A stretch of DNA of 64,000 nt, from positions 124,001 to 188,000 of the IMG/VR virus record IMGVR_UViG_3300010430_000003; one strand, given 5' to 3'. Below the pieces are notes generated by a model. The model made no database searches. It had not been told where the DNA came from and saw nothing but the letters and a program-made list of their open reading frames with translations. Shown piece by piece: positions 4,578 through 36,672 of this stretch; position 1 is the first letter of the stretch, and each line of letters starts with the position of its first letter. The position numbers were made by a program, and so were the translations under genes.

Positions 4578-5282
4578 ATGAAGAGTTTTGTTTGTATAAG
4601 CGACACTCACTCAAAGCATAGAGAGTTAGAAATGCCATTTGGCAATGTTCTATTGCATTCTGGTGATATCTCATATGCTCGTAAGGGTGACTTGTTGGAA
4701 GAGAGAAAACAGCTTATTGATTTCTCTGAATGGCTTGGGGAACTTCCCTATGACCATATTGTTGTGATTGCTGGCAATCACGATTTCCTCTTTGAGAAAG
4801 AAGAAGAGGAAGCGGTGGAGATCTTAACGCAACATAATCCCAATGTTCATTATCTAAATCAAACATCAATCACAATTGATGATATTAAGATTTATGGTGA
4901 GCCAAGACAGCCTGAGTTTTATAACTGGGCGTTTAATGTCTCAAGAAACAGTATGAAGCATGTATGGGATATGGTTCCCGATGATGTTGATATTATTGTT
5001 ACTCATGGTCCTCCGCATGGTTATGGAGATGTTGTTGAAAACAACGCAAGCATGGATATCTTTTCAAATCACAATCAATTTGAAAGAGTGGGTTGCAAAC
5101 ATGCTAGGAGACTTATTGATTCAAGAATAGAACACCCTTTAAAGCTTGTAACCTTTGGGCATATTCATGAGGGATATGGTCAGTGGTATAAGCCCCAAGC
5201 AGGAACACACTTGGTAAACGCATCAGTTGTTAATCGTCGTTATAATGTTGTTAATAAACCAGTTGTAATTGAAATTGATTAA
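4578..5282 (+). CDS. calcineurin-like metallophosphoesterase (MPPED-like)
   Basis: SDTH, HSGD, AGNHD, THGPP and FGHIHE motifs. Confidence 0.92.
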   Translation: MKSFVCISDTHSKHRELEMPFGNVLLHSGDISYARKGDLLEERKQLIDFSEWLGELPYDHIVVIAGNHDFLFEKEEEEAVEILTQHNPNVHYLNQTSITIDDIKIYGEPRQPEFYNWAFNVSRNSMKHVWDMVPDDVDIIVTHGPPHGYGDVVENNASMDIFSNHNQFERVGCKHARRLIDSRIEHPLKLVTFGHIHEGYGQWYKPQAGTHLVNASVVNRRYNVVNKPVVIEID

Positions 5283-5484
5283 TCTAATCATAGCTGAAAC
5301 TCTTATTAATAACATTCTCTGGTTTGAGAGGGATTGGCTCGCCTGCGACCATTTCTGGTATTGGGATAGTACTCGCGACAATGATGGTGATGGAGACTAT
5401 TACACTTCTCGGCGCTATTCACCATTGGAAGATTCAATAGACTGTGCAAGACATTGTTTGCATAATGTGGCACTTATTTATTAA
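5269..5484 (+). CDS. MNIN-family small protein
   Basis: MKLINLIIAETL. Confidence 0.55.
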   Translation: MKLINLIIAETLINNILWFERDWLACDHFWYWDSTRDNDGDGDYYTSRRYSPLEDSIDCARHCLHNVALIY

Positions 5485-5565: not shown

Positions 5566-5585
5566 TTGTAAAATTAAGGAATAAT

Positions 5586-10165: not shown

Positions 10166-10238
10166 GGATCTCTAGCTTAAGTGGTAGAGCTACTGGCTCA
10201 TAACCGGTAAGGTCTCGGTTCAAACCCGAGGAGATCCA
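10166..10238 (+). tRNA. tRNA with CAU anticodon (elongator Met or Ile2)
   Basis: acceptor GGATCTC/GAGATCC, ACTGG-CTCATAA-CCGGT, T-arm CTCGGTTCAAACCCGAG. Confidence 0.88.
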
Positions 10239-10257: not shown

Positions 10258-10449
10258 ATGAACATTAATCAAATGGTAATGTCAGTTTTTATATATGATT
10301 TTGAAGGGGATCAATTTGATTCTCCTCTTTTTAGGGTTAAATTTATCTATCTTCGTCATCCTCAACACGGCAATGAAAGTATAACTAAATATTTATGGGA
10401 CATAGAGGACGCTTTGCGATGCTTAAAAAGAGTGAGAGACGCCCAATGA
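10258..10449 (+). CDS. MNIN-family small protein
   Basis: MNINQMVMSVF. Confidence 0.6.
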   Translation: MNINQMVMSVFIYDFEGDQFDSPLFRVKFIYLRHPQHGNESITKYLWDIEDALRCLKRVRDAQ

Positions 10450-15978: not shown

Positions 15979-17478
15979 TGGATGAAAAAAGCTCTTCATA
16001 TATTCTCTTGCCTGCCGAAAAGGTAATTGATATGGCCACTGTCATCATTGAAAGAATTAATGAGATTCGTGAAGATGATAATAAGCGGATGATTATGAAC
16101 AGGAAAAAGAATATGGTTTCCACATTTTGGAACACCATCTTTAATCGTTCATATGCTCCAACAGATGAAGAGGCACACAAATCCCTGATGAGTGATAAAT
16201 GGTACTTCCATTATCCATCCACGAAACATAGTCATCAAATGACTATCGCAAAGCGCCTTCGCATTGCCGCCAAGATGATAGACCCAGACGCAGAAATGCT
16301 TATCTCCACAAACGATTTATTTTACATAGTGCCATCATGAATGTTATCATTGCTCGCTCTTGGCTGTTATCTAGGTGGGGAGAGATTGTGCCAGTAGCAG
16401 AAGAGAATCGTCGGGAGACATATGTTAAAAACAAAGAATATATGTCCTATGAAGACTTTCAAGAAGCTGCCTTTACTAACCACTTTTTCCTTTTTCGACA
16501 TTATACACAGGAGAAGACATGAAATATCGACTGATTAACCTTTTTTTCACCATCATGGGGATCAGCATTTGGCTGTTTATCTTTGGTGCCCGTTCCGTTA
16601 AAGCAACTCTTCTTTAAGGAATTTAATGAAAGCCTTCATTAATGGATTTCGACACTATCATTTGTTCATTGGGGTAGCACTAGTTGTGCTCTCTCTCACT
16701 TCCGAGAATTGGGTACAACAGGTTATATTTGGTGTGATTGGTATTTGGTATCTGCACGATATTCATAAAGAACATAATAGGGTGTTGGATTGGATCAATG
16801 CCTTTTATCAGACTCCACAAACATCGGAAGAGGAAGAGTGATTTATAAACATATCGCCCTCTCCCTATTGCTTGCAGATAAACGTTCTATGAGCAATAGG
16901 GAAGTTATGAGAGGTTTCATAAAAGGTAGAACGGAAAATCTTCTTAACCTCTTCAAATTAGGTTGGCTCTGGTGAAAGTATTTCTTGTATTCTATGATTC
17001 TGATAGGGGCGACCGTGAAGATTGGAACGTCTTTTATGCCCAACCAGAAGTCTTCTTTGATGAAAATATAGCTAAAGAGAGAGTTCAATGGCTTATGGAT
17101 AATGGGCCAAAGGGTTGGGATACTCACATGATTGAAGCAGATCTTCATAAGAGTTGTCCTCAAACTCTTATAGAAAGAGCAGCAGACGCACTTCATTATC
17201 AGGAGAATCCAGAGGAGTATTAAATGGGAACCGCAACTGAAATTCTCGAAGATGAAATCTTTGCCAACTTTAATGTCCGCGCTGTATGGGGATGTGATAC
17301 AAGGACAGGGCGGGTTGAATTATCTAATAAAGACCAAGGGGAAGATTCTGTTGTCATCTCTCTTACAAAAGAGATTGATAATCAAGAAGATCTCCTTGAT
17401 GTTTTTGGGGTAATTTGCGAGGGGTTTGAATCAGTATCAACTTTGGGCTATTATTTGGAGGTGACAAACTTAGCTTAA
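15979..17478 (+). CDS. cluster of small hypothetical genes, including MNIN-family members at 16337 and ~16838
   Basis: co-oriented overlapping ORFs. Confidence 0.5.
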
Positions 17479-17493
17479 GTTGTTAAGTTGTTT

Positions 17494-17566
17494 GGCCCCG
17501 TAGCCCAACGGCAGAGGCAGAGGACTTAAAATCCTTCCAGTGTGGGTTCGAATCCCACCGGGGCTA
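17494..17566 (+). tRNA. tRNA-Leu (UAA), short variable loop
   Basis: GGCCCCG/CGGGGCT acceptor, GAGGA-CTTAAAA-TCCTT, GTGGGTTCGAATCCCAC. Confidence 0.9.
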
Positions 17567-17568
17567 TT

Positions 17569-18132
17569 ATGAAAGATATCAATAAATTCATCGCAATGCA
17601 ATTTTATGAAACACACGGAGCACTCATTACAAAACAAATTAAATGTGGCATTCGAGAGCCTTTCTATCTCATGGAAAGAGAAGAAACGTTAAATGAAATA
17701 TTGTCGGAAATTTCTAACACGTTGCTTCGTTATCCAAAAGTCTCTCTTCTTCTTGTAAAATGAATATTAAAATTACATTTCATTTTATTTCCTCGTTCGA
17801 TTATGTCGAAGACATGCTTGAAAGTAGTGGGGTGATATTTGGTAATCGAGTGTCATATAGTAAAAGGAACACGGGCTTTCACAATTGGATTTATGAAGAT
17901 TTGGAAGCACTTAGAAGAATTTTAAATGAACATTAATCACAGGATATTAATACTATTTCTTACATCATTTACGTCTCCTTTAGATTGGAGTCGTGATGGT
18001 GTCGTGATGTATTATAGAAGAGATCCCTTTTCAGAAAGGTTTGCGGCCCCCACCATGCTTGCGGCTTGGATTAAAAGTGACCTTCAGGGCTTAGAAGTAT
18101 TCAATTCATACAAAAGGAAGAAAAATGACTAA
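17569..18132 (+). CDS. three MNIN-family small proteins (17569-17763, 17760-17936, 17926-18132)
   Basis: MKDINKFIAMQF, MNIKITFHF, MNINHRILILF; overlapping junctions. Confidence 0.6.
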
Positions 18133-18358
18133 ACCACCAACAGTAGAAAAACTCTCTGATGAAGAGATCAAAGAACAGACTGAAGAAATCATGTCTCAAT
18201 TTGAAGACGATGAAGAAGTGGACTTCGATGAAGAAGCAGAGTTTAATAAACCCAATCCTCGTATGATAAAGATTTTGGCTCAAGGCGGAAATGCCCGTAT
18301 TATTCGAACCCTCGACGAATATTATTCGACAGGGAATAAGGAGGGAGATAATCAATGA
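18125..18358 (+). CDS. small acidic hypothetical protein
   Basis: 77 aa, ATGA-coupled to the sigma factor. Confidence 0.6.
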   Translation: MTKPPTVEKLSDEEIKEQTEEIMSQFEDDEEVDFDEEAEFNKPNPRMIKILAQGGNARIIRTLDEYYSTGNKEGDNQ

Positions 18359-19200
18359 AAGAGGTTAAAAAGGCTTATACAAAAGAATATCAAGATGAAC
18401 TCATTCAACGCTTTCGAGATAACGAAGACGTTAAGGCGAGGGATGAACTTGTTTTCTCGAACGATAAGTTTATTCATAAGGTAGCACGACAGATCTTTAA
18501 GAAGATTGGATCGATTGTATCATATGAAGACGTATATCAAGAGAGTGTTGTTGGCTTTCTGGTTGCTCTGAATTCTTATGATATGGATCGAGGTGTCAAG
18601 TTCCTTACTTATGCATATTATCAAATGAGAAATCATTGCAACAAAGTAATGTATGATAACATGCATGTTGTCCGCCTTCCTACCACCCCACTTAAAAAGA
18701 AAGTGATATGGTCAGCAGGCACCATCGGGAAGAGGCTTAGAAAAGAAGGAAAAGAATTCACTCTTGAAAATGTTGCAGAAGAACTCAATGTTAAGCCCGA
18801 AGACATTAAGGAGACATTCAAGCTTCTGCGCTCCATTAATTATCGCATCTCCACACCTACGGAGAACAACGGAGATGAAGAAGATGCTGCAGCAGATGCA
18901 ACCTTCTATTCATTGTATAACAACTCTCCGTTTCGGACTGATGACTTCTCAAGCCCCTTCCAGAAAACCTATATCAAAGAAGTATATGAACTGACTCAAG
19001 TATTCAAGAATCGATTGGATCACAGAGAGCAGGAAATTTTCGATTATCGAGTTCTTGAGCTTACTGAAAGTAAAACTCTTCAAGAGCTTGCTGATAAGTG
19101 GGATGTATCTGTGGAAAGGATTAGACAAGTTCAGACTGATCTTGAAAAGTCCTTTCGTCTATATTCTCTAAACCATATCATTAATCGAAGGTTGGGATGA
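18355..19200 (+). CDS. RNA polymerase sigma70-family factor, RpoH/sigma32-like
   Basis: region 2 DVYQE..VG...A...YD.DRGVKFLTYA; RpoH-box-like VVRLPTTPLKKKVIW; region 4 TLQELADKWDVSVERIRQ. Confidence 0.9.
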   Translation: MKEVKKAYTKEYQDELIQRFRDNEDVKARDELVFSNDKFIHKVARQIFKKIGSIVSYEDVYQESVVGFLVALNSYDMDRGVKFLTYAYYQMRNHCNKVMYDNMHVVRLPTTPLKKKVIWSAGTIGKRLRKEGKEFTLENVAEELNVKPEDIKETFKLLRSINYRISTPTENNGDEEDAAADATFYSLYNNSPFRTDDFSSPFQKTYIKEVYELTQVFKNRLDHREQEIFDYRVLELTESKTLQELADKWDVSVERIRQVQTDLEKSFRLYSLNHIINRRLG

Positions 19201-22200
19201 GCAATAGCTCTCTCTACAATAATCGATTGATTGCTTATATGATTCTCACCAATGTGAAGAGGGTACGCAAAGTCGGCAGTTTGCTTCTATGAGGATTTTT
19301 ATTCATATCCATGTTAATACACTAAATAAATTAACTCAATGACCATTAATATCATTATCGCTTGGAAGACTATATATGGCAACTCCCCCACTTTAGATAA
19401 ACCACTGTGGCTTGGCAATTCAATTGTACAACTTAATTCGCACGACAAGTATTTAACGTGGATTCACAGAATGTCATATTTTAGGAAAAAAAGATTTGAC
19501 GAGGCAACATATACTTGAAATCTTCAAACGTTAATTTAGAAGTAGCAAGGGCTTGGGTACAATCTTCTCACGGTTGGAAGGTTGGAAAGAGAAGAAGCTA
19601 TAATTATTTTGAAGGCGGTTATTTTTCTATCGGAAGTTTAGAGTTTTTTATTAGAACAGCAATTTCATATACGAAACATGTGTATACGAAACACATATTA
19701 CGATTACATAAATGAATATCAACTTGATCATTCGAAATATGATTACATCAGAAATTATTTTCTTATATACTCATCATGATAAAGCAAATGATATTATGTT
19801 ATGGGGGAAAAGATACCTTCACGTTCTTGAAAAAATGAAAATGGATAGTCTGATCCACTATTATATTCATAAGTCCCTTAAGGAAGTATGCAAAAGACTT
19901 CTCAACAGATAAACCTCTTCGTTGCTTTTATGTGGTTTAACTCTCATAGACTTGATAGGATACCAAGGAGAAGATCTTCTTTTAGGAGATGGCCTTGCGT
20001 GTATCCTGGAATACTACAGAAAGAACTCAGACATGAAGCGTTAGACTTTAAGGCGAGAGTTGGCCATGAATATCAATATATTAATTGCGAAGTCTTATGT
20101 GTGGAATTTCAATGCTTTTGACGTGACATGTGAAAGATATAATATACTTCACAATCCGATAGATAGTTATTTCAATAATTTGATTATGTCCGACATTTCT
20201 GCGATGATGTATACTAGGACTCATTATATGAGAATCGCAGCATATATAGCAAAATGAAAGACAATATCAATCTTCAAGTGATGTCATTTTTCCTTTATTC
20301 AGAAATAGAGGTGCTTTTCTGTAAGGCCATAAATGAAAGAAGATATAAGTATAGTAGGGACATCGCCACCTATTATCCATATGATATAGAATTTTCTTTG
20401 TCTTCTCTTAAAAAAAGGGAAAAGAATGAATGAAATGATAGCATCATTCTTAATAAACTCTGGATATTCTTTAGTCTTGTCCAAAGCCACGGGTTTCTCT
20501 AGGAGAGGGACATACCCAGATTGGAAGTTCTATACTCACAATTCAATAGTGCGTCTTATGCTAAGAATGAACAACAGTCCGCTTAAATGTAGAGATTGGA
20601 ATGATTGATACAGCCATTAACATTGCGATTGCAGGGTCAATCTTCACAGAAGTGAATATATTCATGGTAAGATCATCCCTAAAGAGGGAGAGAGTAGAAA
20701 GACATTGGGTCTTTTACCACATCAGGAAGGGTAATTATCGACGAGATGAATATATCGTTGTGAAAACTCGTGCTTTTGTGGGGCGCAACCCTTGAATTAT
20801 ATCAACAACATATCAGATATCAATATAATGATTGCCACAATTATATTGGATAGAATTCCTTATGGTACGAGGCGATATTTTATAGAAAAGAGAATTAAGA
20901 GATATATGTCATATGCTCAATGGGATTCTCGTTTCGTGCTTGGTGAACCTAAACGCAGAGAAGATTATGTTTTGGGAAAAACAAGACGGGTTCGATATAT
21001 CCTTAAACGTAGACAATAATATCAATATCATAATTGCATCTCGTTTTTTGCATGCGTGGACTCAGCAGAGCTGTACATTCTCAGCCTCTGAGAGTAGATC
21101 ATATTCTACATGGTCTCTAGCCCATGTTAAAGGTTCACAAAAATACAGAGCAGATTATTTATATAAATTAAGTTTGTTTAGATTAAACAGAGTGCAAGAA
21201 TGTGAATCATAATTTAATTATTGCAACTCGCTGTCTCCATTATATTAAATGGAGTCATGATGAATACAGAACATGGCCACTCATCACTTCATATTCTAAT
21301 TGGGTTCACGAGTTTATTCATGGAACTGATGAATATCGAATTGGCTATAACATAGAATACGTTCGGGTTTTGAAAACAAGAATGAGAGAAAACCATGGGA
21401 ATAATAAATGGGCTAGGTGGTGGAATGAATATTAACGTCATTATTGCTTCAAAGTTTTTCAACACTTTTGGAGCAAAAGCAGGGGATATGCAACCAATGT
21501 CAAAGAGTTCATATTCTATATGGTCACTCCTCTTTGTTAAAGGTTCAGAAAAGTATAGAAAAACTTATCTTTCCAATCAAAGTCCAAAGATGCGAAGATG
21601 GATGTCATTGGAGATATTTGATAAATGAACATCAATTTAATCATAGCGGGCCATGTCTTCAAAGAGATAAATATGTATATGTTCATGTTGGAACCAGAAC
21701 ATCTTACTTATATTCGAGGAGAAAGAACAGAAAGTGATTTCATGGTTAGGCATATAGTTTGGCAAGGAATCATGTCAAGGTATATTAAGGGAAGAGTGAG
21801 GATTTTCCATGTTTCATATCCACCAACCAGATTATGAACAATTCAAATGTTAACGGAATATTGGCTTGTTGTTATGTTGGAGATATTGGCCTCAACCTTG
21901 TTGAGCCTAAGCTGATAAGTTATAGATCTCGCATAAGAATGTTTGGTGCATATGCCAGAGATGAATATATCAGGAAAAGAACAGAGCACTTCAAAATAAG
22001 ATATTCCAAATATGAACATTAATATCATCATTGCAACTCATATCTTTACGGAAGTGAGCATATATTATTCTCCAACCGTTAATAATTTTGTGTATCCCAG
22101 ATCTCAGCTTGCACTACACCCTGATCTTGTTGCATATACAAGATATATGAAAAGAGCAGCAAGAAGATTCTTGGAAGAATATCCAATAACATGAATAGTT

Positions 22201-24883
22201 CAAATATCAATATCATCATTGCTCTTCTTATCTTCGATGAAACAGGTGTCAATTTCATTCCGTCTTGTTATAGTAGGTCCAGAAGTCAAATGAAACCAAC
22301 AAAATTATTGCACTACAAAGATTATATAGGAATACAAATGCACCGATTCCATGAGAGATATCCAATACCATGAATAACAATAGATTGAATATCAATATGG
22401 TGATTGCAATCAATATCTGCGCATCAGCAGACATTATGTATTTGAGAGAAAGAAAAGAAAAAGAAGTAAAGCTTAAAGGAAGACTTACAGTGATCAAAGC
22501 CCGCATTGCTTCTTTATTGTTATGGAATCGCTGTCGCTATTTCCATAGGCAATTCCCAGTTGATCATGAATAACAATTCAATCAACATGTTCATTGCCGC
22601 TCATATCATTTCAAGCATTGATATATATTACATTAAGCAGATAGGAGAGTTTATATACCCCAGAGGACATATCAACTCACAGAGATTCATATATTATAGA
22701 GAATATATACATCAAACTTGTCGAGCCTTCGCCAAAATATATCCAATGGACTCAGAAAGGTCTAACATGTTCGACGAAGTAACAGTGCAATGAATGATTC
22801 AAATATCAATATGTTCATCGGTTTTCATGTCTTTTCAGACACAAATATATATCACGTTGTTCGGATGGGGGAGTTTATCTATCCTAGAAGAAAAGCATAC
22901 TCATATAGATTCTCATTTTATAAAGAATATGTATGGCAAGCAACGCGACGCTTCGCATCATCATATCCAATACAATGCCATGAATAATTCAGAAATCAAT
23001 ATTGAAATATGCAACAACTTCGTTTCAAGAGCAAGCAATGGTTCTATAAGATTCTATATGCATAGAAGTTCAATGTATTATAGATTATATGGGTATCAGG
23101 TAAGAACGAACAAAATAACTATCTATACAAGAATATTCTTTCAACCAATAATGAAGTATATGATGGAAGAGCATCCAACGGTTATTAAGCAGGATGCGGA
23201 ATCACAGTATATACGGTGGAAGATGTGGAAACTGACAGAGCGAGCAGAGAGGATTCTAAGAAAGTCATTCATTTAGATAAGGGTTTATCTATAAGGTAGT
23301 GTGGAATGGATTGTGTGGGTGTGTGCTTGGTTAGAAGGGAACGACCGGAGGGAGTGTAGTAGTTGATTCTAGCACTGTAACTCAGGAACAAAGTAACTAG
23401 GAATAACAGAGATGAAAAGAGACATAATTAATCAAATAATAGCACAAACATTATTCGTAACCCACATTCAAGAAGTGTGGAAATATAGACTAACTTATCA
23501 TAGAGGAACATATAAATATTATGAAGGGTTAGGTGATATCCTTCCTTTACCAAGAATAGCAGAAACAGTGTTAATTGATAAAGCCTCACACCTCAGAAGA
23601 AAACCATGATTGATACAATTGTAAACTGTCATATTGGGGCATTGATATCATATCAGTTTTCGAGATCGCACATATTGCATGGCGATCTCCCCAGACCCAG
23701 ATTAACACTATCCAGTTATTTTAATGTTAAGAGCAGAAGAAGCATGGGGTATCAATGGTTAGTGAGAGAATTATGAACATTAATATCCAGATAATGAGTT
23801 TTATGGTTAGAGAGTTCTTCTTCTATCCAAACACTGTGGTCTTTGAAAGATATGTATATTATGACTATGCAGATGTATTGGCATTCTATCAAATAGATAT
23901 TAAAGATACTTTGATTAAGTATAGGAAATTAATGTGAATGTTGAGATAGCAATACGGTTTCTTGAACCACTAACAGATGCTACCATGTTTTTGAATAGTG
24001 CTAGCACACGATATTCATTATCAGAGCCTTGCCACTCAATAAGATCAGAGGAGGTGAGATTTTTTAAGAAAAGCTTGAAATATTACTATGAAGTGCAACA
24101 ACAATGAATATTAACATTATGATAGCAAACTGTTGGTTGGGGCCATTCACATATTCCAGTATGTATTTGAACAATTGTTATAAGAAATATAGCATTATTC
24201 GTTATGGATCTGCCATCGCTGGACGCTTCTTAAGAGAGGTTAGATATCATTTAAATAACCTTTTGATAGCTGATAAATGAATATCAATCAAATGGTGGCA
24301 TATGCATATATTCGATCTTATTGGTGGAGAAACATCAGACCTATCACTGATAGGTCGAGTTTACAATGGCAAATAGAATGGATAAATATAACTGACTACA
24401 TCGAGGAAGTTGAGTACCATATTTCCTCATTACCTGATACCACTTACCCAGTACCCAGGTAGGGCTCGCCCACATGCGCACACGCATAACACACACACAT
24501 ACGCACATATGTGCAATAGGTGAACAATGAAAAAGATATTAAAGAGCAAACAGAAAGGCGTTCATTATTCCAATCATAAGAGCACATATGAAGAAATCAT
24601 AACATTAGTGGCCATTGATGTAAGCCATGCAAACATTAATCTATTGATAACAGAGAAGTTCTTTAAATCAATGATCAATAATGGATCACTGTTTACTTCA
24701 AAGTTATTTCGTCCGCCCTATCCAAGATATAATCCAGCTGCTATCATGAGACATCATAGTTATGCTTGGGCTTGGCAAACAATTATTAATGAGAATGTGC
24801 TACTTAATGTGCATTCCTGCGCCAGAACAAATATTAACTATTTGCATAGGTTAGGAATTAATCAGAATTTATCTCATTGTTAA
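19197..24883 (+). repeat. tandem array of ~28 paralogous MNIN-family small ORFs
   Basis: starts at about 19197, 19339, 19515, 19712, 19888, 20066, 20254, 20426, 20601, 20792, 21007, 21202, 21425, 21625, 21834, 22012, 22191, 22370, 22566, 22790, 22980, 23412, 23606, 23773, 23934, 24104, 24277 and 24527 (motif internal); each carries (I)NxxIA-type motif, ~180-230 bp period. Confidence 0.85.
24470..24515. repeat. alternating purine-pyrimidine (CA/CG) low-complexity tract
   Basis: CACATGCGCACACGCATAACACACACACATACGCACATATGTGCA. Confidence 0.7.
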
Positions 24884-24901
24884 AAATCCATAGTTCCAAA
24901 T

Positions 24902-24920
24902 GATATTGATATTCATTATC
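24902..24920. promoter_or_regulatory. Fur-box-like site
   Basis: GATATTGATATTCATTATC matches the classical GATAATGATAATCATTATC at 17 of 19 positions; intergenic. Confidence 0.45.
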
Positions 24921-25037
24921 AAAATGTTTTTTCAGAAACCTCGAATCCTTTTTGAATTCCGCGCATCTTGCGCGCTCCTTAGATCACCCGAATCAAAACT
25001 GTGGCATTGATACCACGCAAATAAAATGAGAATGACC

Positions 25038-25163
25038 GAAACCTTTTTGAGTTTCGAGACTCTTAACCTTGAAGCCGCGAAACACCGCACAAACACTGAC
25101 CGAAACGGAGTGCAGAAAAAACGGAGAAAGTTAGAAACCTTTTCGAGTTTCGAGCACCTTAAC
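25038..25163. repeat. two 30-bp direct repeats (25038-25067, 25134-25163), each containing a GAAAC-N8-GTTTC dyad
   Basis: GAAACCTTTTTGAGTTTCGAGACTCTTAAC vs GAAACCTTTTCGAGTTTCGAGCACCTTAAC (26/30). Confidence 0.8.
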
Positions 25164-25239
25164 ACTGAGACCGAGGGAACACGTTCCGAGGCTCAACAAC
25201 CGCACAGGCTGCCAAGCCTACCAAACAACGAGGTAAATC

Positions 25240-25887
25240 ATGGGAAAGAAGAACGAAGAGACGACCGAAGAGACGCCGAGCAACATGGAGCGCATTTCTT
25301 CTGCGCTGGCCCTGCTGGAGAACGTACAGCCTCCTGCGACGTCAGACGAAGTCAAGTCGATCAAGGCCGAGTCCGATAAGCTGAGCAAGGCGCGTGAGGC
25401 GCTGAGCGCTGCTGGTCTCGACACTGACGCGGTCGATGCGAAGATCGCGGAACTCGGCGAAGCGGAAGCGAAAGCGGACGCGGGTCGCTCGGAACTGGTT
25501 GTTGCGCTTGCTCATGTTGAGCGCTTCACCAAGATTCTGGGTCAACGGTGCTCCGGTGCTAGGGTGGAGAGTGTCCGGGAGAAGTTCGCCGGAATCATCG
25601 AGGCCGGAATTCCTGAGTTTCCGGGACCGTGTGAAATGAAGACCCTCGCAAGCGGTAAGAAGCGGGCTGTCCACGGTGGACGGGCAACGCAGATCGTTAC
25701 CGCTCTCCTCTCGATGTCGGAGAATGGTCGGCTGCGCGTCAGCATCGAAGCCATGGCGGAAGCCCTGCTGGACGTCGACGATACTTTCGGCGACCTCGAA
25801 GGTGCTGCCCAGCAGTGTCGCACGGTACTTCAGAACTATGCCGACGTGTGGACGTCTGATAGTTCCTTCGTGTTCTCGCAGAATTAG
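25240..25887 (+). CDS. hypothetical protein in a GC-rich island
   Basis: GAGGT RBS, 215 aa, strong G/C third-position bias; coiled-coil N-half, possible winged-helix C-terminus. Confidence 0.8.
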   Translation: MGKKNEETTEETPSNMERISSALALLENVQPPATSDEVKSIKAESDKLSKAREALSAAGLDTDAVDAKIAELGEAEAKADAGRSELVVALAHVERFTKILGQRCSGARVESVREKFAGIIEAGIPEFPGPCEMKTLASGKKRAVHGGRATQIVTALLSMSENGRLRVSIEAMAEALLDVDDTFGDLEGAAQQCRTVLQNYADVWTSDSSFVFSQN

Positions 25888-25984
25888 CGAGGACATACCC
25901 ACCACGGGCATAGGGTATCGGGAGTTAATCAAATCTCCCGGCCCTTTGCCAAACATTCCAAACAAAACAAAAAGATCCATTAAC

Positions 25985-26102
25985 AGGGGGGAGGGGTATC
26001 CCCCGGAATGTAAGTCGCCGTTATCCAAAATCGGCTTGTTCCTCCAACTAAGACCATTCAAAAAACTGCGCACATTATTTCTCAAAATAAGGGGGGAGGG
26101 GT
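25985..26102. repeat. duplicated AGGGGGGAGGGGT tract at the transcription convergence point
   Basis: copies at 25985-25997 and 26090-26102. Confidence 0.75.
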
Positions 26103-26848: not shown

Positions 26849-29800
26849 TTAAATTGCTGCAATGGATTTAATTGCAATATCCCATTCAACATGGGCGTCT
26901 TTAACTTGACCGTTTTCAATTATGAAAACACGAATATCGAATGATTCGGTCTCCCAAGCAGAAAGTTTATCTCCGAAACAATTGCGGACATCATTCGTAT
27001 CCCCAAATCCATAATCACTTCCATGACCCCAATAACAAAAAATGAAATAAGGTTTGGTTGCAAGATTTAATTCCCAATCTGCAACCACTTGTTTTAAGTT
27101 GGCTTCGTCTTCAACGTCGATAAAGTTGTTAATCAGTTGATCAAAGATTGATTTCATAAATGAACCTCCATCTCCGCAAGCTTGACAAATAAGATTCAAT
27201 CCAAATGCGTTGAATCGACTCATGTCGATGCATTGGATTCCATATTTCATTGCGTCCCAAACTAGTCTTGGTTTGAAAATGAAAAGATTGACGGCTTTCA
27301 TTCCGCACCAAGCTTCTGACAAAAGCATAATAAACAATCGGGGTGAGATCATTCATAACTGATACCATGTTCGGACGCTTTTCAAATAGCTATTGATCCA
27401 AGTGTGTTGAATATGACTTGAATAAATAAGCGGATTAAATCTATCATTGCCAGGAACAAGAGTTCTTTTTTGAGAAATAATGAAAGTTCGATGAGCGGGA
27501 TACCTCAACAAACTTCTCACGAAGGAATAATAAATGAGCGTGTTGAGATTACCAGTCAATGACGGAAGCCTTCAAATACGGCGAATCAAGATTTGAATCC
27601 GCCCAATCCGTATTATCCTCCCACCATTTCAAGCCCCTAAATGTCCCCGTGTTCATATGGGGATCTCCAGCTTGTCTAAGAATGACTTCCATGATTGCTT
27701 CATCAACCTCCGTCATATCTTTGTGATTGAGGATATACTGAAAATGCAAGGCCATCTCTCTGAACTCCTCATAAGATTGCACATCCCAGTCGGGGAAGGT
27801 TTTTGAAGAATGATGGGTTATTTCATCATAAATGTTTTCGGGATCAAATGCGCGGTATGGGAATGCGATCGTTTTGACTCGCTTCGCGAGATCATCATAA
27901 TTCATTGCTGCTCCAATCTTCGTTGTTCTCTTAACAATGTCTTAAGAGAATGAATATTATTGGTATTGAAAAGCCTCATATTTATGTGGTAATATGAATG
28001 TGGAAAAATAAAATTATCAACCCAGAAAGGGTTGAGGAAAAATCCAAGCCTTCGCAACATTGCACAATGTATTTTTTGATTGATATTCATTAGTAAGGGT
28101 AACGTGAAAAGGTTCTATAATTATCAAAATCAATCTTTTCTTCCATATTCCGCCACCGGGCATCATTCTCATTTCTCATTAATGTTAAATATGAATCCAT
28201 CCAACCATTTGTGTATCTTGCATTCGGTTTAATATCATAATATGGTTTTATATAATATAAAGAATCAAAGTGACAACAAATCTGTGCCATCTTTTGTATC
28301 ATTGCATATTTTATTATAAGATTGATATTCATGTTGGGTTATTCATCTGGAATCTGATAACGCGAGAACTGCAATTCTGATGGGGAATCTTCAAAAGGGT
28401 AAGCATCATGGATAACCTTCACATGCCACCCTGCTTTCGTAAAGTCCTCAACAAGTCGATCAATATATAAGGTTAACTTGTATACATTAAAGGTCGAACA
28501 TCCGCTCATGAGCCGTTGATTGACTTCCTTGACCACCTCTTCATAAGATGGTGCCAAATGTCGTTCCACTTCATCAGGAGTAACAGGTATGGGTTGGTTT
28601 TCTCGCTTTTGCGGTCGTTTTATGGGTTTGTTAAACATGCTTGTTTTCCCATGGCAGAGACCATCCGTAATCATCGCCTTCTTCAAACATGCGTTCTGGA
28701 TCGAGATTTAGAACTTTGCATAACTCTTCTTCAATTCTTTCGGGATCTGGATCATGAACAACGTGTTCACTGACAGCATCTGCAATCCGTTCAACCAATT
28801 TGCGTGCTTCGTCGCGTTCTTCTTTTAATTGCGTCATATTGGCTTCATATTCTTTATGAAGTTCTTCGATATGATCGGCAACAACATCACCAACCCATCC
28901 CTCAACATAATTGCCAGCAAGCTCTCTTACCCAATCCGCATTCTGTTTATGTCGCTTGTTATCGCTCATTGAATGTCCTAGACTTGCATTCCCAAAGGAT
29001 TCATGATGGTTAAAATTGTGGTTGTGATCGCAAGCATTAGAATAAAAAGAAATACTGGTTTTGCCAAATTGGGTGCTTTCTTTGTGAAAAATTCATCGAG
29101 ATATGCCACTATAATAAGAATTAGGGATAACGAACAGATCACAGTGATGACAATCACAAAATACATAAAGAACATTAAAAGATCAATCATCACCACCTCT
29201 TTTTTCAAGACATCTGTGAGCACATTCAAGTTCATCTTTCAATCGATCAATCTCCATGACGCACTCTCCATACTCATTTGATAGATAGATAAATGCTTCA
29301 TCAAGCAGTGCGATAGACGCAGATTGCTCCGCAATGATCTTATCTTTCTCATTGGATTCAAATAGCTTTGGATTCATTGCTTTCACACCTTCCCCGAAAC
29401 AATCCAAACATAATTGAGTGGAGTATGATGTAATCAAATATCGTGGCATCACATCTTCTCGATATTCTTTGCAGGACCTGCATGTTTTGAATTTGATTCG
29501 GTCAATCTCAAGACTCATTTTGATTCTAGAAATCATCAATAATCCGCGTTGTCGTTAAACCATTTCCAAAAGGAATCGGTTTTCAAACCATAAACTGCAA
29601 ACACAAGAGCTTCAAAAGCATACTGGACATGATCTCTGCCGGGATATCCATCATCAAGAATTGATTCATTCATCTCTTTAATGAATGATTTAAGACTCTT
29701 AACATTAACGTCTTTATCATCAACCATTGTTGGTGGCCCATTTTCATTTCGCTTTTCTTTGAATGTGGCAATTTCCCGTAATTCTTCCGGAGTTAATTCA

Positions 29801-32800
29801 TCTAAACTCTTTCTCAATAAAGTGTTGTATTCAAAAATGTCAGTCATCGTTTTCCTCCGGCAATAACACGCCCCAATATAGTGCGCACCATCCTTCCATT
29901 AACACCAACTCAATATCCTCACCGTATTCATCAGCAAGCTGTTCGGCAATGTTTGCAAGCTCTTTGATGGTGATTCTATCCCACTCACTATCAGGAAGGT
30001 TTTTGTAAATTCGTTTCCATTTCGTTTTCTTCATATAAATATTATATCAAAAATCTGTGCAGATTCAAGAATAATTAAATATCGAATGTTTATGAGGTCG
30101 ACGTTCGCCGGGCATTCGCGTCTGCAGCCCTTACACGACATGACAAAATATAGATAGTTCTTTCTAATTCTTGAAATTTAAAATTTTTAATATAATCAGT
30201 TCTATCTGCACACAACCTTTTGTGACTTATAAAAGAACGAACCCAATTATTATCGATTGATGCAAGAAACATGTGAGTTAAAATCAAATTATGATTCATA
30301 TAAAATCTCGCATGCAACAGCGTTATAATAAAGTTGAAGAGGTTGCTGTTTATGAAATCTATTATAGCTTCTTCTTAAGAGAAGATAATCTTGCGTTAAT
30401 GCATATGAATCATTTATATACGCATATGCCACAATTAAATTCACATTAGTGTTCACATTCTTTCACGGTGTATGTTAAAGTTGTTTCTCGTGTTTTGGGA
30501 TCATCTCATCTCCTTAAAAAATTTCATCATAATGATTGATTACAGGAAATCCTGCATCTGCTATCCTTCCTCGTATTTCAGCATAGAACAATATATCTTC
30601 TTTATTCCGTGCATTGCAGCCACCGCTATGATCGAGACCATCAGAAACCATTACAGCGGAGACATCCATATCAGCTTTCATCTTCCCATAATCACCATTC
30701 CAAGTCCCTTTTATGGGTTCAAATCCCATTACATAGATTGCGTAATCAGAATCAGGTGATTTTGTGATATATAGATTTTCTGTATCGTAATCTCCTCCGG
30801 GTGAATTGATTTCAATGTTGCAATCAAAATCATCAAAGAGATCAATAACTTCTTGTGTTTTCCATCGTTTCATTTTCTTCTCATACTTGAAATTAAAAAA
30901 GGCACCCCTGTTCCGGCCATAAGTACAACTGTTAAAGCTGTGCGTTCACCAAAAGTGATTGCAAAGTCTGCAAAAAGAGCAATGATTGAAACCCCAATTA
31001 TGCATGAAATAAGCGTTGTGAATAAACCATCATTCTCATTTTCTTTTTTCATCTCAAAGTCCCATGAAGATTTGCAATCTTGATCGTTTATTATGAAGAA
31101 TCATAGAACAAAAATCACGATAAGCATATTTTATTCTAATCTCACGATATGAATGATATTTCTGATAGAAATCCATTTCAACTTGAGTCTTCCATATTAC
31201 AGGAACTCCTTGAATAACCATATTATACCCAACACACAAATTTATCATTGTATCTTTACACATTTATATTTTTCAATGTTCGCAAATAAGAAGTGAGCCA
31301 ATTCTCAACTTTATTGTGATAAAAGAAGCTAGAACAAAAATATTTTGGCCAATAAAAACTATCCCATGATGTGAATCCGAGCACTTCTATTGTTGTCGTT
31401 CTTCTAAGAAAACGATCACGCACAACTTTATTAATATCCATATTTTTTAAAATGCCTAAAGAAGATTTGAGGACGAAAGCAATTATATTTAAGCATGGAT
31501 TGATAATTATCATATGAACAGTAAACATCTTTCATTGAATAACATTCCAACGGTTCAAAGGGATAGGTAGGATGCCACCAATACCATATTAATCGGTTAG
31601 CAAGAATAGTATTAATATTTGAATTCATTGATTTTCAACATATAATGTTCATACCATCTTTTTAACCACCGTTCACCACAATTAATAGGATCAGTATATT
31701 CTCTAAAAAATATCAAGAAGTGACTTCTACCTTTTCTTGGGTGACTTTCATAACCGACACCGGGAAAATTTCTATCACCTAAATTAAAATTGGGATTGCT
31801 AGGTGAATATAATTCCAAATATATTCGGCAGGCTAGAAGTTGATTGATGTTGGAATTCATCGAATTTCAATTAGGGGAATGAAAAACAAAACAATAGTTA
31901 GGAATTGACCATATTGGTCCATCTTCATAAACCCACGCATATGTTTCATTCCCTTCCATTATAAAGGAATCATATTGATATGTGATTTTAAAATCATGCC
32001 ATGAAAACCATGTAGTTAAAAACTTTGCGGCAATGGCATAATTAATTTCTTGCGAGGTTGGATTATACTTTGGAAAGATGTTATACATCTGAACAAATCA
32101 GAATGATATAACAATTCCACAATTCTTTAACCCACTCATGTTCTTGAGGTGTTAAATCTTTCATTATACTTCCGTAAGATTGCACATAATATCTTCTGCG
32201 AATCGCTTGTTGGAAATTACACTACAAATTTCAGTAATCTCATCACAAAAAACATCAAAAGCCTCTTCTCCTTCTTCCCAAAGATTGAGGAGAAGTTGGC
32301 TTGCTTCATTCCCAACAGATCGTGTGGGCCAAGCAATATCGTATGCTTCTAGGTGATCATGACCTTCATTCGCCGCATCAACAATAATTCGAGCAATGAG
32401 TTTAACATCGTCGAGCGATTTAATTCCAAATTCAAACGCTTCTACAGAACTTTTGTCTTGAATAGAATACGTTCCAAACTCCATATAAATGGGGAAAATA
32501 TAATCAAGATATTCTTGTGTAGTTTTGATTTTCACTTATTATTCCTCGCAGTTTCGTTTTGAGAAAATTAATCCAATTTGAATGCCAATTAATAGTTTCT
32601 ATTGCTTGATAATATTCCCATGCGCAATAACGCCGAGATTTCAGGTCAATATCATAATACTCTCCATCTCTAAAAAGCATAATAGCAATATATTGATTAA
32701 TCATGGTGTCATTCATGCTAACTTGCTGATTCTAATGCCCAATAAACACACCGCCATAAATCTTCAACCCATTCTCGCTCATCTGCAGAAATGGCTTCAT

Positions 32801-34474: not shown

Positions 34475-36672
34475 TTAATATCTTCTATTGGCATTGGCAA
34501 TAATGATAGGACATGAGATCATTTCTGAATATGAAGAGGACTTGAAAAAAATTAGGTGATAATACCAGAAAATATCTCTTTTTTGAAATTTAGCCCAACC
34601 AGTTAAATTTCTTAATAAGAAGAAGTCATGATTTAAAGGTCGCAAACAAAAAATACTATAAATACTATATGATGATAAAACGGTGTTTTGCAATACACAA
34701 TGAGCAATATATTTATTCACATAATGGTTATTCATAATTAACAGTTTTTATTTCACCATCCTTTGTGTCAAGCCAGTCCCACAGTCGATCATCACCACGC
34801 ATTATTACCAAATACGGATCAATCCAACCACATGTTAATTCTCCATATGTTCTAGCAACACAATAAGAATGAGTGTATTCCATGATTTTAAAAGTAAACA
34901 TGGAACGAATCATTCTTGTAAGAAACATTTTATATATTTCTTTATTTAAGTTCATGTCTTCATCTCTTAAATAAATTATACTGTTTTCTGTACAGAATTC
35001 AAGAACAGTATTTTATCAAACGGTGTAATGTATCGTCTTTAATAATTCTCGCCCACTCGTTTTGGTCTTTAATGTGAATTGAGGCGAACTTAAATCTTGT
35101 GTAAGGTCTTACCTTATCACTTTCGAGATGGGAGAAAATTCCGTAGAACTGGAAGACTTCGGAATAATAAAAATCTGCAAGAATATATCCTCTTGCTATT
35201 TGATTGACATTCATCATCTTCTCTTTACAATGGTGAGGTCTTTCGAATCAAAGAAAGGTATGGTTCCATATAATCTTTTAATCATTTCTTCATAATCTAC
35301 ACTGCGAACTGAAAAGGAAATTCTATCACAGTTTAGATGATTTGTAAAACTATATAAAATTTGAGGTTCTGCCATAAGAATAAATCTGGCGATTTGCACG
35401 TTAATTTTAACAGCATTCATACTTTAATCTTTTCTGCTGCTCTATGAATTCTCTCCTCAAGATGATCATGGTCTTCATCTAAATCAAGAATAATTCCTTC
35501 TAATTCCTTCTTCTTTGTTCTCAACCTCTTTATTTCTTTTGCCCTTCGATCAAGAAGAATTGTGCGATACCACATATCCCTTTTTGGAACATAAACTTCT
35601 TTTTCTTCACCATCAATGAATCTTATTGTATGGGTATGAGGAATGACTTCTTCGATTTTTTCCCATTTGTAATAATTACATGTTTTTTGTTTCTTTGTTT
35701 GCTGAATATCCCAAACAGGCGAATCATGATCAAGATCAGCTATAGCAACTTCCATATCTTTTTGCCAAAGATATTCAATTATGGAGTAATTGAATAAAAT
35801 AGATAATCCAAGCGCAGCGGCGAAAACTGCAATTATGGCTATAATGAATAACATTTATACCCTTAATGGTTTGGGAAATCATTTAAATTGAAATCTTTAA
35901 AATCAACTAAATCTAAAGAAGAAATAGACACTTTTTTATTCAATGGTTTTCTCATTCGATTTCCACGTTTATCATATAAAACACGAACTTCCACAATTTG
36001 TTCTTTATCATTTGTACAGGTATACCACCAATGCTGATTTTGTCTTACATAAGCTTCCCCAAACCATCTTGCTTTATGGTTACTTCTAACCTCTTGACCC
36101 CACACTAAAGGTTTGTGTGGAATCCTTTTCAGAGAGGAAACAGCATAACTTAATTCAGATTCTATATCATGTGATATGAGAGTGTATTGGAATTCGCATG
36201 ACCGATTATTTGAAACCCACCTTTCTCCAAGAAATCCTCTTTCATACATTAAAAATGTATACGCAACCTTTTTATTAATCATTTAAATTTAATCAATTTT
36301 GAAGAACTGTGTGTTAAAAATGTATGTACATTTTTATACATAATGTCAGACATATACTTACGAGTAAGAGTTGTATGACTAATTGTCAATCTACCGGGAC
36401 TTGGAGTTGACGACCAAATATATTCCCACTCTGATGAGATCATCATGAAAGCCACTTGAAAATTAATTTTCATTTTGAGTCAATCTCAAATTATTTGTAT
36501 ATTCTTGCATAAAATGCATCATATATATCTCGAAAAAGGTAGAGGAATGATTAGTGTAGAGAAAAGAAATAGAGTGCTCCAAAAAGAGCTTTGAACCAGC
36601 CATCGCTACATTATGATGATTCGAATGAAATGTTATAGAATACATTACTTTTATTCGAATTATCTTATTCAT
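34475..36672 (-). CDS. seven MNIN-family ORFs (34475, 34728, 34999, 35214, 35863, 36279, 36463) and a membrane-anchored protein (35417-35854)
   Basis: VNKYIAHC, MNLNKEIYKMF, MNVNQIARGY, INVQIARF, MINKKVAYTF, INFQVAFM, MNKIIRIKV. Confidence 0.6.
34975..35002 (-). promoter_or_regulatory. sigma70-like promoter
   Basis: TTGAAT-N16-TATAAT. Confidence 0.6.

What the first reader, a model, noticed from the sequence alone, without database searches (positions are those of the whole stretch)
19197..24883. ~28-gene head-to-tail array showing local birth-and-death evolution
Seen: nearly gapless ~180-230 bp units. Neighbours form subfamilies: ~21007/21202/21425 (SYSTWSLAHVKGSQKYR, SYSNWVHEFIHGTDEYR, SYSIWSLLFVKGSEKYR); 22012/22191/22566/22790 (IYY...GEFIYPR...RF...YPI); 20601/20792/21834 (R.(D/E)(E/D)Y(I/V)..KT). 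The first unit is truncated at 31 aa. No conserved inter-unit DNA repeat, integrase or reverse transcriptase is visible. Inference: an accordion-like diversification nursery next to the strand-switch region that seeds the dispersed copies.
Basis: partly seen in the sequence, partly recalled or inferred. Interest (0 to 1): 0.8.

Follow-up and report, generated by a model that had tools for sequence, protein, structure and literature searches.

The report
Tandem array of phage mini-protein paralogs
An uncultured marine-sediment jumbo phage carries 28 back-to-back genes, plus about 25 scattered ones, for a previously unseen family of roughly 60-residue proteins that change several times faster than their neighbours; it resembles the multigene families of large animal viruses, and what the proteins do is unknown.

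Summary
Window 19197-24883 (+) holds 28 head-to-tail small ORFs. The stretch is 96% coding, and 24 of 27 junctions are stop/start overlaps. All units belong to one family with an M-N-I-N-x-x-I-A start, an invariant Asn, and conserved Y, R-x-S, W and Y-[IL] positions further on.

The window is part of a 210-kb IMG/VR phage contig from marine sediment. About 25 more members lie scattered over 1-42 kb, always on the local coding strand.

No profile, family-library or fold search found a relative, except in one related phage (L028). There the flanking sigma factor and a 215-aa ORF are 74-76% identical. Between them sits a different array of about 30 units of the same family. The best-matched units are only 28-36% identical, with dN 0.6-0.9 against 0.16-0.20 for the flanks. 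Order is roughly collinear, and each lineage has its own duplicates.

Tandem duplication, fast divergence and loss are therefore supported. An active accordion is not:
- The youngest pair of units is 61% identical in DNA.
- The array is invariant in every assembly of this phage.

Seeding of the scattered copies from the array has no support.

Function is inferred only. The most likely reading is a co-translated repertoire of small basic helical proteins acting on host or phage targets.

The parts
18355..19200 (+). Phage sigma-70-type factor gene, the upstream anchor of the array. Its stop overlaps the start of unit 1.
   Evidence: Pfam Sigma70_r2/r4 and PHROG 351. 76% aa identity to the L028 orthologue.
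19197..19292 (+). Unit 1, truncated (31 aa), with a degenerate motif.
   Evidence: L028 has a full 81-aa unit at this position.
19339..19518 (+). Unit 2 (59 aa).
   Evidence: Reciprocal best hit to L028 r06.
19515..19715 (+). Unit 3 (66 aa, TTG start).
19712..19912 (+). Unit 4 (66 aa).
   Evidence: Sister to L028 r08+r10 in the tree.
19888..20121 (+). Unit 5 (77 aa).
   Evidence: Reciprocal best hit to L028 r07.
20066..20257 (+). Unit 6 (63 aa).
20254..20433 (+). Unit 7 (59 aa).
20426..20608 (+). Unit 8 (60 aa), motif shortened.
20601..20795 (+). Unit 9 (64 aa), subfamily 9/10/15.
20792..21019 (+). Unit 10 (75 aa, TTG start; start uncertain).
   Evidence: Orthologue of L028 r17.
20967..21212 (+). 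Unit 11. The start is uncertain: ATG at 20967 as in the database protein P0002, or a non-ATG start near 21003. The motif begins at 21018.
21202..21435 (+). Unit 12 (77 aa, GTG start).
21425..21628 (+). Unit 13 (67 aa), closest paralogue of unit 11.
   Evidence: 78-nt DNA repeat D7.
21625..21837 (+). Unit 14 (70 aa).
21834..22022 (+). Unit 15 (62 aa).
22012..22194 (+). Unit 16 (60 aa), in the window-only clade 16/17/19/20.
22191..22373 (+). Unit 17 (60 aa), same clade.
22370..22573 (+). Unit 18 (67 aa).
22566..22793 (+). Unit 19 (75 aa). With unit 20 it forms the youngest pair: 46% aa and 61% DNA identity.
22790..22987 (+). Unit 20 (65 aa).
22980..23276 (+). Unit 21 (98 aa). Its C-terminus and the downstream gap are conserved with L028 r28.
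23277..23411 (.). Intergenic gap 1: GT-rich, with an SD-like AGGA before unit 22. One of only two DNA-conserved islands inside the array.
   Evidence: 71% identity to L028 over a 182-column blastn alignment, with long identical runs. SD-like motif.
23412..23609 (+). Unit 22 (65 aa), orthologue of L028 r29.
23606..23776 (+). Unit 23 (56 aa), orthologue of L028 r23.
23773..23937 (+). Unit 24 (54 aa).
23934..24107 (+). Unit 25 (57 aa, GTG start).
24104..24280 (+). Unit 26 (58 aa).
24277..24462 (+). Unit 27 (61 aa).
24463..24526 (.). Intergenic gap 2: CA-rich, with an SD-like AGGTG before unit 28. The second DNA-conserved island.
   Evidence: 81% identity to L028. The motif at its 5' edge occurs only once in the window.
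24527..24883 (+). Unit 28 (118 aa). The motif lies at residues 35-41, after an extra N-terminal extension. Orthologue of L028 r30.
24884..25239 (.). Conserved non-coding stretch after the array, with two exact-core direct repeats.
   Evidence: (D8).
25240..25887 (+). G+C-rich 215-aa ORF, the downstream anchor of the array.
   Evidence: 74% aa identity to L028. dN 0.20.
17760..17933 (+). Dispersed family member just upstream of the sigma operon.
17926..18132 (+). Dispersed member with a 1:1 orthologue in L028 (3113-3349).
10258..10449 (+). Dispersed member (63 aa).
   Evidence: Array-only HMM, E = 6e-6..
5275..5484 (+). Dispersed member (start codon uncertain).
16337..16522 (+). Dispersed member (start codon uncertain).
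27902..28332 (-). Two adjacent dispersed members (27902-28090 and 28090-28332).
30090..30456 (-). Two overlapping dispersed members (30090-30299 and 30289-30456).
31431..32088 (-). Three consecutive dispersed members (31431-31628, 31612-31860, 31867-32088; the last is weak).
32504..32704 (-). Dispersed member.
34999..35420 (-). Two adjacent dispersed members (34999-35214 and 35214-35420).
36279..36473 (-). Dispersed member.
38211..38834 (-). Three consecutive dispersed members (38211-38441, 38428-38631, 38628-38834).
39425..39652 (-). Dispersed member.
40252..40497 (-). Dispersed member.
41259..41679 (-). Two overlapping dispersed members (41259-41483 and 41464-41679).

Best explanation
SHOWN. 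The stretch is a 28-gene array of one protein family. The family is known only from this uncultured 210-kb marine-sediment phage and one relative.
- Each unit encodes a basic protein of about 55-80 aa. It is rich in Tyr, Arg, His and Trp and is predicted to be all-helical.
- The family signature is M-N-I-N-x-x-[IV]-A-x-x-aromatic-[LI], with an Asn invariant in 77 of 77 members. Conserved Y, R-x-S-[FY], W and Y-[IL] positions follow further on.
- The genes follow the phage sigma-factor gene without a break. They overlap stop-to-start, and most lack a Shine-Dalgarno motif.
- The array is old. It sits between the same two conserved genes in the related phage and keeps a roughly collinear order.
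- Its units have diverged 3 to 5 times faster at non-synonymous sites than the flanking genes.
- Each lineage has made its own, mostly adjacent, duplicates and has lost units or let them diverge beyond recognition.

INFERRED (expression). The units are made from long polycistronic messages by termination-reinitiation coupling. There would be three translation blocks, starting at unit 1, at unit 22 and at unit 28. Expression would be early or middle, together with the sigma factor.

INFERRED (duplication mechanism). Duplication and loss happen by unequal recombination between units. The 20-40 nt of similar coding sequence at each unit's 5' end would keep the register.

INFERRED (function, least certain). 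The proteins form a diversified repertoire on one small helical scaffold. The conserved N-terminal helix and the few core residues hold the fold or a common contact. The variable surface binds different host or phage targets, as in host take-over or anti-defence. Selection would keep many different copies rather than many identical ones.

The confidence given (0.6) is for the whole statement. It is about 0.9 for the anatomy and family, about 0.8 for the evolutionary mode, about 0.6 for coupled polycistronic expression, and about 0.3 for the binder-repertoire function.
For: Anatomy and coding:
- ORF chain, overlaps and shuffle control.
- The motif's codons vary synonymously.
- Only 8 of 28 units have an SD-like 4-mer, and these include the units after the gaps.
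- Promoter-like and terminator-like sites are no more frequent than in shuffles.

Family:
- The array-only HMM recovers all units and finds 16 further ORFs outside the array at E < 0.05.
- A window-only profile recognises 27 ORFs of L028.
- Conserved columns in 77 members.
- Basic pI and composition.
- AlphaFold models with 3-4 helices, pLDDT 68.

Uniqueness:
- Only this phage's and L028's proteins were found among 5.8 billion and 1.84 billion proteins.
- No recurrent hit in Pfam, PHROGs, PADLOC, NCBIfam, PDB, BFVD or the ESM Atlas.

Evolution:
- Flanks are 74-76% identical.
- dN is 0.16-0.20 for the flanks against 0.62-0.89 for the best-matched units.
- Collinearity of 8 strong orthologue pairs, tau 0.79, p = 0.006.
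- Lineage-specific supported sister pairs and cross-genome pairs in the tree.
- Mantel test in the window.
- 21 units have their closest relative within their own genome, 13 in the other genome, and 24 have none.
Against: - No expression, proteome or functional evidence exists. No RNA run was listed.
- The structure models have only moderate confidence (pTM 0.35-0.37).
- The amino-acid make-up is close to what random codons of this base composition would give, and the protein language model barely recognises the sequence. A large share of each sequence may therefore be under weak constraint.
- dS is saturated, so positive selection cannot be told from relaxed selection.
- Known anti-defence proteins are more often acidic than basic (my own knowledge).
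- In L028 similarity does not follow proximity.
- No recombination junction or young copy was caught.
Confidence: 0.6

Rival explanations
1. The conserved N-terminus is a shared address tag. The proteins would be packed into the capsid and injected with the DNA, like the T4 internal proteins, whose only common part is the capsid targeting sequence. They would act as first-line inhibitors of host nucleases.
For: The proteins are small and basic. The strongest conservation is in the first 12 residues, across otherwise very different sequences. [quoted passage not shown] A position about 13 residues in is often E or D, in 22 of 61 members, which could be a protease site.
Against: - Conservation is not limited to the N-terminus: W, Y-[IL] and R-x-S are kept across the family.
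- There is no consistent cleavage motif.
- The array is contiguous with the sigma-factor gene in a non-structural region.
- No similarity to any PHROG of internal or head proteins was found.
- More than 50 different cargo proteins would be without precedent.
Confidence: 0.12
2. The units are small nucleic-acid-binding proteins that act on DNA or RNA, for example modulators of transcription linked to the neighbouring sigma factor, or nucleoid or RNA binders. They would not be inhibitors of host defence.
For: pI is 9-10.6 in most units, and the proteins are rich in Arg, Tyr, His and Trp. They are in the same operon as a sigma factor. They are small helical domains.
Against: No helix-turn-helix, ribbon-helix-helix or other DNA-binding family matched any of the 77 members beyond single chance hits. 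A regulator would not be expected in more than 50 fast-diverging copies.
Confidence: 0.15
3. The array is largely neutral baggage. The ORFs would spread by duplication and drift almost freely, with no individual function. Their frames would stay open only because a stop would break the coupled translation of downstream units.
For: The composition is close to that of random codons. dN is near saturation. 24 of 58 units have no detectable relative beyond the motif. Recognition by the language model is low and model confidence is moderate.
Against: - Both lineages keep about 28-30 intact units through saturated dS, with a single truncation.
- Asn is invariant in 77 of 77 members and W is kept in 47 of 54.
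- Dispersed copies are kept as orthologues.
- A phage genome limited by capsid size is not expected to carry about 11 kb of useless sequence (my own reasoning).
Confidence: 0.1
4. The periodic units are not genes but a DNA-level or RNA-level repeat, such as an array of promoters, binding sites or small RNAs.
For: A 22-44-nt direct repeat recurs every 180-230 nt.
Against: - 28 open frames against 7.7 expected.
- The repeat's codons vary at synonymous sites while the residues are kept.
- There is no Rfam match.
- Promoter-like and terminator-like sites are at chance level.
- Between the two phages the coding parts are not conserved as DNA, while the protein signature is.
Confidence: 0.02

Closest known systems
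Internal-protein (IP) locus of T-even phages, with proteins that share a capsid targeting sequence
   Same: A cluster of small, basic, very diverse phage proteins that share a conserved N-terminal segment and differ between related phages. They are thought to be kept diverse by conflict with host enzymes (PMC3012670).
   Different: Here there are 28-30 units per array and more than 50 per genome, instead of a handful. Conservation extends to core residues along the whole domain. No protease site, no virion evidence and no sequence similarity were found. The array lies in an operon with a sigma factor.
Multigene families and gene accordions of large eukaryotic DNA viruses (African swine fever virus MGF families; poxvirus K3L amplification)
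   Same: Tandem, co-oriented paralogues in a viral genome. Each lineage has its own duplications and losses. Members diverge quickly, and copy number differs between lineages (my own knowledge of ASFV MGFs; adaptive amplification in vaccinia, PMC3953438, listed but not read).
   Different: Accordions are recent, near-identical copies that expand and collapse within a few passages. Here the youngest pair is 61% identical in DNA and the array is invariant in the sampled population. The units are much smaller, and the host is a bacterium.
Host-takeover or early-gene modules of large phages (for example the SPO1 host-takeover module; early small-ORF regions of T4 and T5)
   Same: Long runs of tightly packed small genes of unknown function, close to phage transcription factors (my own knowledge).
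   Different: Those modules are made of unrelated genes. This one is a single family.
Anti-CRISPR and anti-defence gene clusters
   Same: Small, fast-evolving, lineage-restricted phage proteins found in clusters, with no hits in family libraries.
   Different: Such clusters hold a few unrelated genes, usually with a helix-turn-helix regulator. No such regulator was seen here, and no member matched PADLOC or Pfam. No defence target is known.

Membership tests
Any described protein family (Pfam, PHROGs, NCBIfam, PADLOC, PDB, BFVD) | A significant or recurrent match of the members to a family profile or to a solved or predicted fold | tested here: not met
   All 77 members were scanned one by one, and every weak hit is to a single member. 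The profile search against PDB gave 0 hits at E up to 10. Foldseek gave E about 9.
T4-type internal proteins | Only the N-terminal capsid targeting sequence is shared; the rest is unrelated | tested here: not met
   W (47/54), Y-[IL] (49/77), R-x-S and a mid-domain Y are also conserved.
T4-type internal proteins | A prohead-protease cleavage motif directly after the tag | tested here: inconclusive
   E or D about 13 residues in, in 22 of 61 members. There is no fixed motif.
T4-type internal proteins | Presence in the virion and ejection with the DNA | not testable with these tools
   This needs virion proteomics. The phage is uncultured.
Tandem multigene family evolving by birth and death | Co-oriented tandem paralogues of one family | tested here: met
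Tandem multigene family evolving by birth and death | Lineage-specific duplicates beside shared orthologues; units lost or truncated | tested here: met
   The tree has a window-only clade (u16/17/19/20), L028-only pairs (r15/r16, r08/r10, r09/r12) and cross-genome pairs (w10/r17, w23/r23, w27/r25). 24 of 58 units have no counterpart. Unit 1 is truncated.
Tandem multigene family evolving by birth and death | Similarity falls with distance along the array | tested here: inconclusive
   Window: r = -0.20, p = 0.001. L028: r = 0.00, p = 0.46.
Gene accordion (recent amplification) | Near-identical copies and copy-number differences within a population | tested here: not met
   The highest DNA identity between two units is 61%. 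Contigs of four runs and three other assemblies are 99.9-100% identical, with no joints. Contigs can hide rare variants.
Diversity-generating retroelement | A reverse transcriptase and a template/variable repeat pair | tested here: not met
   No RT domain was found in the roughly 83 kb examined, although within the window only the larger ORFs were scanned. No long near-identical repeat pair was found.
RiPP precursor family (conserved leader, variable core) | A modifying enzyme next to the precursors, and conservation confined to the leader | tested here: not met
   No RiPP enzyme domain was found in the neighbouring genes. Conservation extends through the domain.

The most novel reading that the evidence does not exclude
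The invariant-Asn N-terminal helix could be a common docking module. It would plug more than 50 diversified mini-proteins into one machine. That machine could be the phage's own (packaging or ejection, or its sigma factor and RNA polymerase) or a host complex. The phage would then carry a combinatorial effector library of a size so far known only from eukaryotic pathogens and large animal viruses. The array would be kept at about 30 different units by selection for diversity.
Probability: 0.15. Interest if true: 0.8.

Novelty: new variant of a known kind. Interest (0 to 1): 0.55.

Why it matters
Phage genomes are size-limited and usually carry few paralogues. Here about 11 kb of the 64-kb window is given over to more than 50 versions of one tiny protein, and a second lineage keeps the same arrangement while almost every residue has changed.

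If the proteins are effectors, this is a natural library of variants on one minimal scaffold, with built-in comparative data on which positions are free to vary. It would give a handle on how large phages cope with diverse hosts or defences.

It is also a clean case for studying how ORFan families arise and turn over. The family is invisible to every current library.

Tried and rejected
- Megablast of 9 kb against INPHARED phages: no match. tblastn of a unit: only chance hits at E of 8-9. The sigma factor has no relative above 28% identity among cultured phages.
- A degenerate DNA pattern for the motif scanned over IMG/VR gave 24 stretches. Only those of this same contig are real; the others match the motif alone.
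- Scans of the sigma-factor and 215-aa ORF alignments over IMG/VR and JGI metagenomes found only this contig or very distant sigma factors without arrays.
- A 522-aa hit with six matched stretches (P0006) turned out to be a low-complexity tandem repeat, not a relative.
- A dN/dS test for positive selection was abandoned because dS is saturated at 1.2-2.3.
- A chimera reading of L028 r28 (N-terminus like unit 27, C-terminus like unit 21) was not retained. The N-terminal likeness hardly goes beyond the family motif.
- An internal-deletion origin of unit 1 from an r01-like unit is only weakly suggested by the alignment.
- A k-mer shared between the post-array repeats and the 43.8-44.2 kb region lies inside an ORF there and is coincidental.
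- No RNA run holding the array was listed.
Full report
WHAT THE WINDOW IS. The window is bases 124,001-188,000 of IMGVR_UViG_3300010430_000003, also filed as JGI Ga0118733_100000259, a 210,326-bp contig. It is a phage.
- The window encodes a sigma-70-type factor, a UvrD-type helicase, an AAA ATPase, PhoH, a PD-(D/E)XK exonuclease, several glycosyltransferases and five tRNAs.
- The adjoining parts of the contig encode Cpn60, Dam and sugar-metabolism enzymes.
- The runs that hold the sequence are labelled marine sediment metagenome.
- No cultured phage is close.

THE OBSERVATION. Between 19197 and 24883 the + strand carries 28 consecutive small ORFs.
- A shuffle control gives 7.7 stop-free segments of 50 aa or more (maximum 15), against 28 observed.
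- 95.7% of the stretch is coding.
- 24 of 27 junctions are overlaps, 14 of them the four-base ATGA. There are three gaps, of 46, 135 and 64 nt.
- Every unit begins, directly or a few residues after its start codon, with a version of N-I-N-x-x-I-A followed by an aromatic and an aliphatic residue. Unit 28 is the exception: its motif follows a 34-residue extension.
- The codons of this motif vary at synonymous sites (AAT/AAC, ATT/ATC/ATA, GCT/GCA/GCG), so the constraint is on the protein.
- The DNA repeats that the repeat finder reports every 180-230 nt are this coding motif.
- Unit 1 is 31 aa long.

THE FAMILY IS LARGER THAN THE ARRAY.
- A profile built from the 28 units alone finds 16 further ORFs outside the array at E < 0.05.
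- A position matrix of the motif finds 49 sites in the window. All but one are on the local coding strand, each with 52-94 residues left before the stop.
- After one round of iteration, about 25 members lie outside the array: 7 on the + strand at 0.8-18 kb and 18 on the - strand at 28-42 kb. A few weaker candidates lie just outside the window.
- None lies in the 44-64 kb block of large genes.

WHAT THE PROTEINS LOOK LIKE. In an alignment of 77 members from two phages, conservation is not confined to the N-terminus.
- The Asn of the motif is invariant (77/77).
- Ile before it (63/77), [IV]-A after it, and the aromatic-aliphatic pair are strongly kept.
- Further on come a Tyr (36/50), R-x-S-[FY], a Trp (47/54) and Y-[IL] (49/77).
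- Most units have a pI of 9-10.6. They are rich in Tyr, Arg, His and Trp and poor in Asp, Glu and Gly. Their overall make-up is close to what random codons of this base composition would give.
- Two AlphaFold runs, with 26 and 77 paralogues as the alignment, give an all-helical model of three to four helices whose first helix is the motif. Confidence is moderate only: pLDDT 68, pTM 0.35-0.37.

NO KNOWN RELATIVES.
- Profile searches of 5.8 billion proteins and of 1.84 billion cluster representatives without a word index return only proteins of this phage and of one relative. They also return one low-complexity false hit.
- Pfam, PHROGs, PADLOC and NCBIfam scans of all 77 members give only single chance hits.
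- A PDB profile search, Foldseek against PDB and BFVD, and the ESM Atlas give nothing.

VARIATION WITHIN THE POPULATION. Every other assembly of this phage is essentially identical.
- An ENA contig covering 19572-27188 has 3 mismatches in 7,617 bases.
- Other JGI, ENA and Logan contigs are 99.9-100% identical.
- All contig pieces of four marine-sediment runs lie on the array without a single difference, indel or junction.
- Contigs drop rare variants, so this shows a fixed majority form. It does not show that rare variants are absent.

A RELATED PHAGE. The sigma factor has two relatives at 75-77% identity in Logan assemblies. One of them, L028 (12.9 kb), could be read.
- Its sigma factor is 76% identical and a 217-aa ORF is 74% identical to the window's genes at 18355 and 25240.
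- Between them lies a 7.2-kb array of 30 small ORFs with the same motif.
- A profile made only from window sequences recognises 27 ORFs in L028, 24 of them within the array. This is an independent confirmation of the family.
- At the DNA level the flanks align at 71-76%. Inside the array only two short islands align, and these are the two intergenic gaps (23277-23411 and 24463-24526).
- The best-matched units are 28-36% identical in protein. dN is 0.62-0.89 against 0.16-0.20 for the flanks. dS is saturated everywhere at 1.2-2.3, so dN/dS says nothing about positive selection.
- Eight strong reciprocal pairs are largely collinear, with three local swaps (tau 0.79, p = 0.006). Cross-array similarity tracks relative position (permutation p = 0.006).
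- With the motif excluded, 21 units have their closest relative in their own genome, 13 in the other genome, and 24 have none.
- A maximum-likelihood tree is mostly unresolved, with a median terminal branch of 1.6 changes per site. It does support a window-only clade (u16, u17, u19, u20), L028-only pairs (r15/r16, r08/r10, r09/r12) and cross-genome pairs (w10/r17, w23/r23, w27/r25, and w04 with r08+r10).
- Within the window, similarity falls with distance (Mantel r = -0.20, p about 0.001). In L028 it does not.
- The most similar pair of units in the window is 61% identical in DNA.

READING OF THE EVOLUTION. The array is ancient and positionally stable. It predates the split of the two lineages and has kept about 30 units and a rough order. 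Its sequences change 3 to 5 times faster than their neighbours. Occasional local duplications and losses continue in each lineage. This is birth and death in the ordinary sense. It is not an accordion of recent amplification. Nothing indicates that dispersed copies come from the array: none has a close relative there, and the copy at 17926 has its own orthologue in L028.

HOW IT IS PROBABLY EXPRESSED (inference). The sigma-factor stop overlaps the start of unit 1. Stop/start overlaps then continue through units 2-21 and 22-27.
- Only 8 of 28 units have an SD-like 4-mer upstream, against a background of 13%. These include unit 1 and the two units that follow the conserved gaps.
- Promoter-like and terminator-like sites are no more frequent than in shuffles.
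- The simplest reading is long polycistronic messages, shared with or following the sigma-factor gene, translated by termination-reinitiation in three blocks. The conserved gaps would act as re-entry or regulatory points.

WHAT IT PROBABLY DOES (inference, low certainty). The proteins form a small helical scaffold with a handful of fixed core positions and an otherwise free surface. It is kept in more than 50 different copies through saturated divergence, in a non-structural part of the genome next to a transcription factor. This is best read as a diversified set of binders for host or phage targets. Three rivals cannot be excluded without experiments:
- a shared address tag for packaging into the capsid, by analogy with the T4 internal proteins (PMC3012670);
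- nucleic-acid binding, suggested by the basic, aromatic-rich make-up;
- near-neutral baggage.
A non-coding repeat is excluded.

COMPARISON AND NOVELTY. The closest analogues are the hyperplastic internal-protein locus of T-even phages and the multigene families of large eukaryotic DNA viruses. The array is not a member of any described protein family. The phenomenon, a virus-encoded tandem multigene family, is known. Three things appear new: its size in a phage, the minimal size of the units, and the combination of positional stability with extreme sequence turnover. I could not search exhaustively for comparable phage arrays in the literature, and two full-text searches gave nothing relevant.

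Noticed in passing
window 23277-23411 and 24463-24526: The only two sizeable non-coding gaps inside the array are conserved as DNA with the related phage (71% and 81%), while the coding units around them are not. Gap 1 is GT-rich and gap 2 is CA-rich, with alternating purine-pyrimidine runs. Each ends in an SD-like motif before the next unit. Each of the two units before these gaps ends in TAG, whereas all the others end in TGA or TAA.
   Followed up: partly
window 24884-26100: This segment has a higher G+C content (45% in its 2-kb bin, against 32-43% in the other bins). It holds a 356-nt conserved non-coding stretch with two copies of a 21-nt element (25038 and 25134), each containing a small inverted repeat. 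A 215-aa Ala/Glu-rich ORF of unknown function follows; it is 74% identical in the relative.
   Followed up: partly
window 26100-26150: Convergent strand switch. The + strand genes end near 25.9 kb and the - strand genes end at 26102. A terminator-like hairpin lies at 26123-26150.
   Followed up: no
window 5490-5566, 6931-7002, 10166-10238, 17493-17567, 55573-55656: Five phage tRNA genes: Ile-TAT, Arg-TCT, Met, Leu-TAA and Met. Several of them decode A/T-ending codons, which fits the A+T-rich genome.
   Followed up: no
window 45613-51444: A 1,943-aa ORF with a cytidylyltransferase-like segment, followed by an 825-aa ORF without matches. Further on lie a trypsin-like protease gene (57046-57828, - strand), PhoH, an exonuclease and two GT4 glycosyltransferases.
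   Followed up: no
window 18125-18358: A 77-aa very acidic ORF lies between the two upstream family members and the sigma factor. It is only 40% identical to its L028 orthologue, so fast evolution is not confined to the family.
   Followed up: partly
L036 1-969 (contig 115,001-115,969) and L038 (contig 188-197.5 kb): Outside the window the phage encodes a Cpn60-type chaperonin, a DUF2201 protein, adenylosuccinate synthase, split transketolase-like genes and further glycosyltransferases.
   Followed up: no
window 1-42000, both coding blocks: All dispersed family members are co-oriented with their neighbours. Several sit in small runs of two or three: 27.9-28.3, 30.1-30.5, 31.4-32.1, 35.0-35.4, 38.2-38.8 and 41.3-41.7 kb. 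These are miniature arrays.
   Followed up: partly
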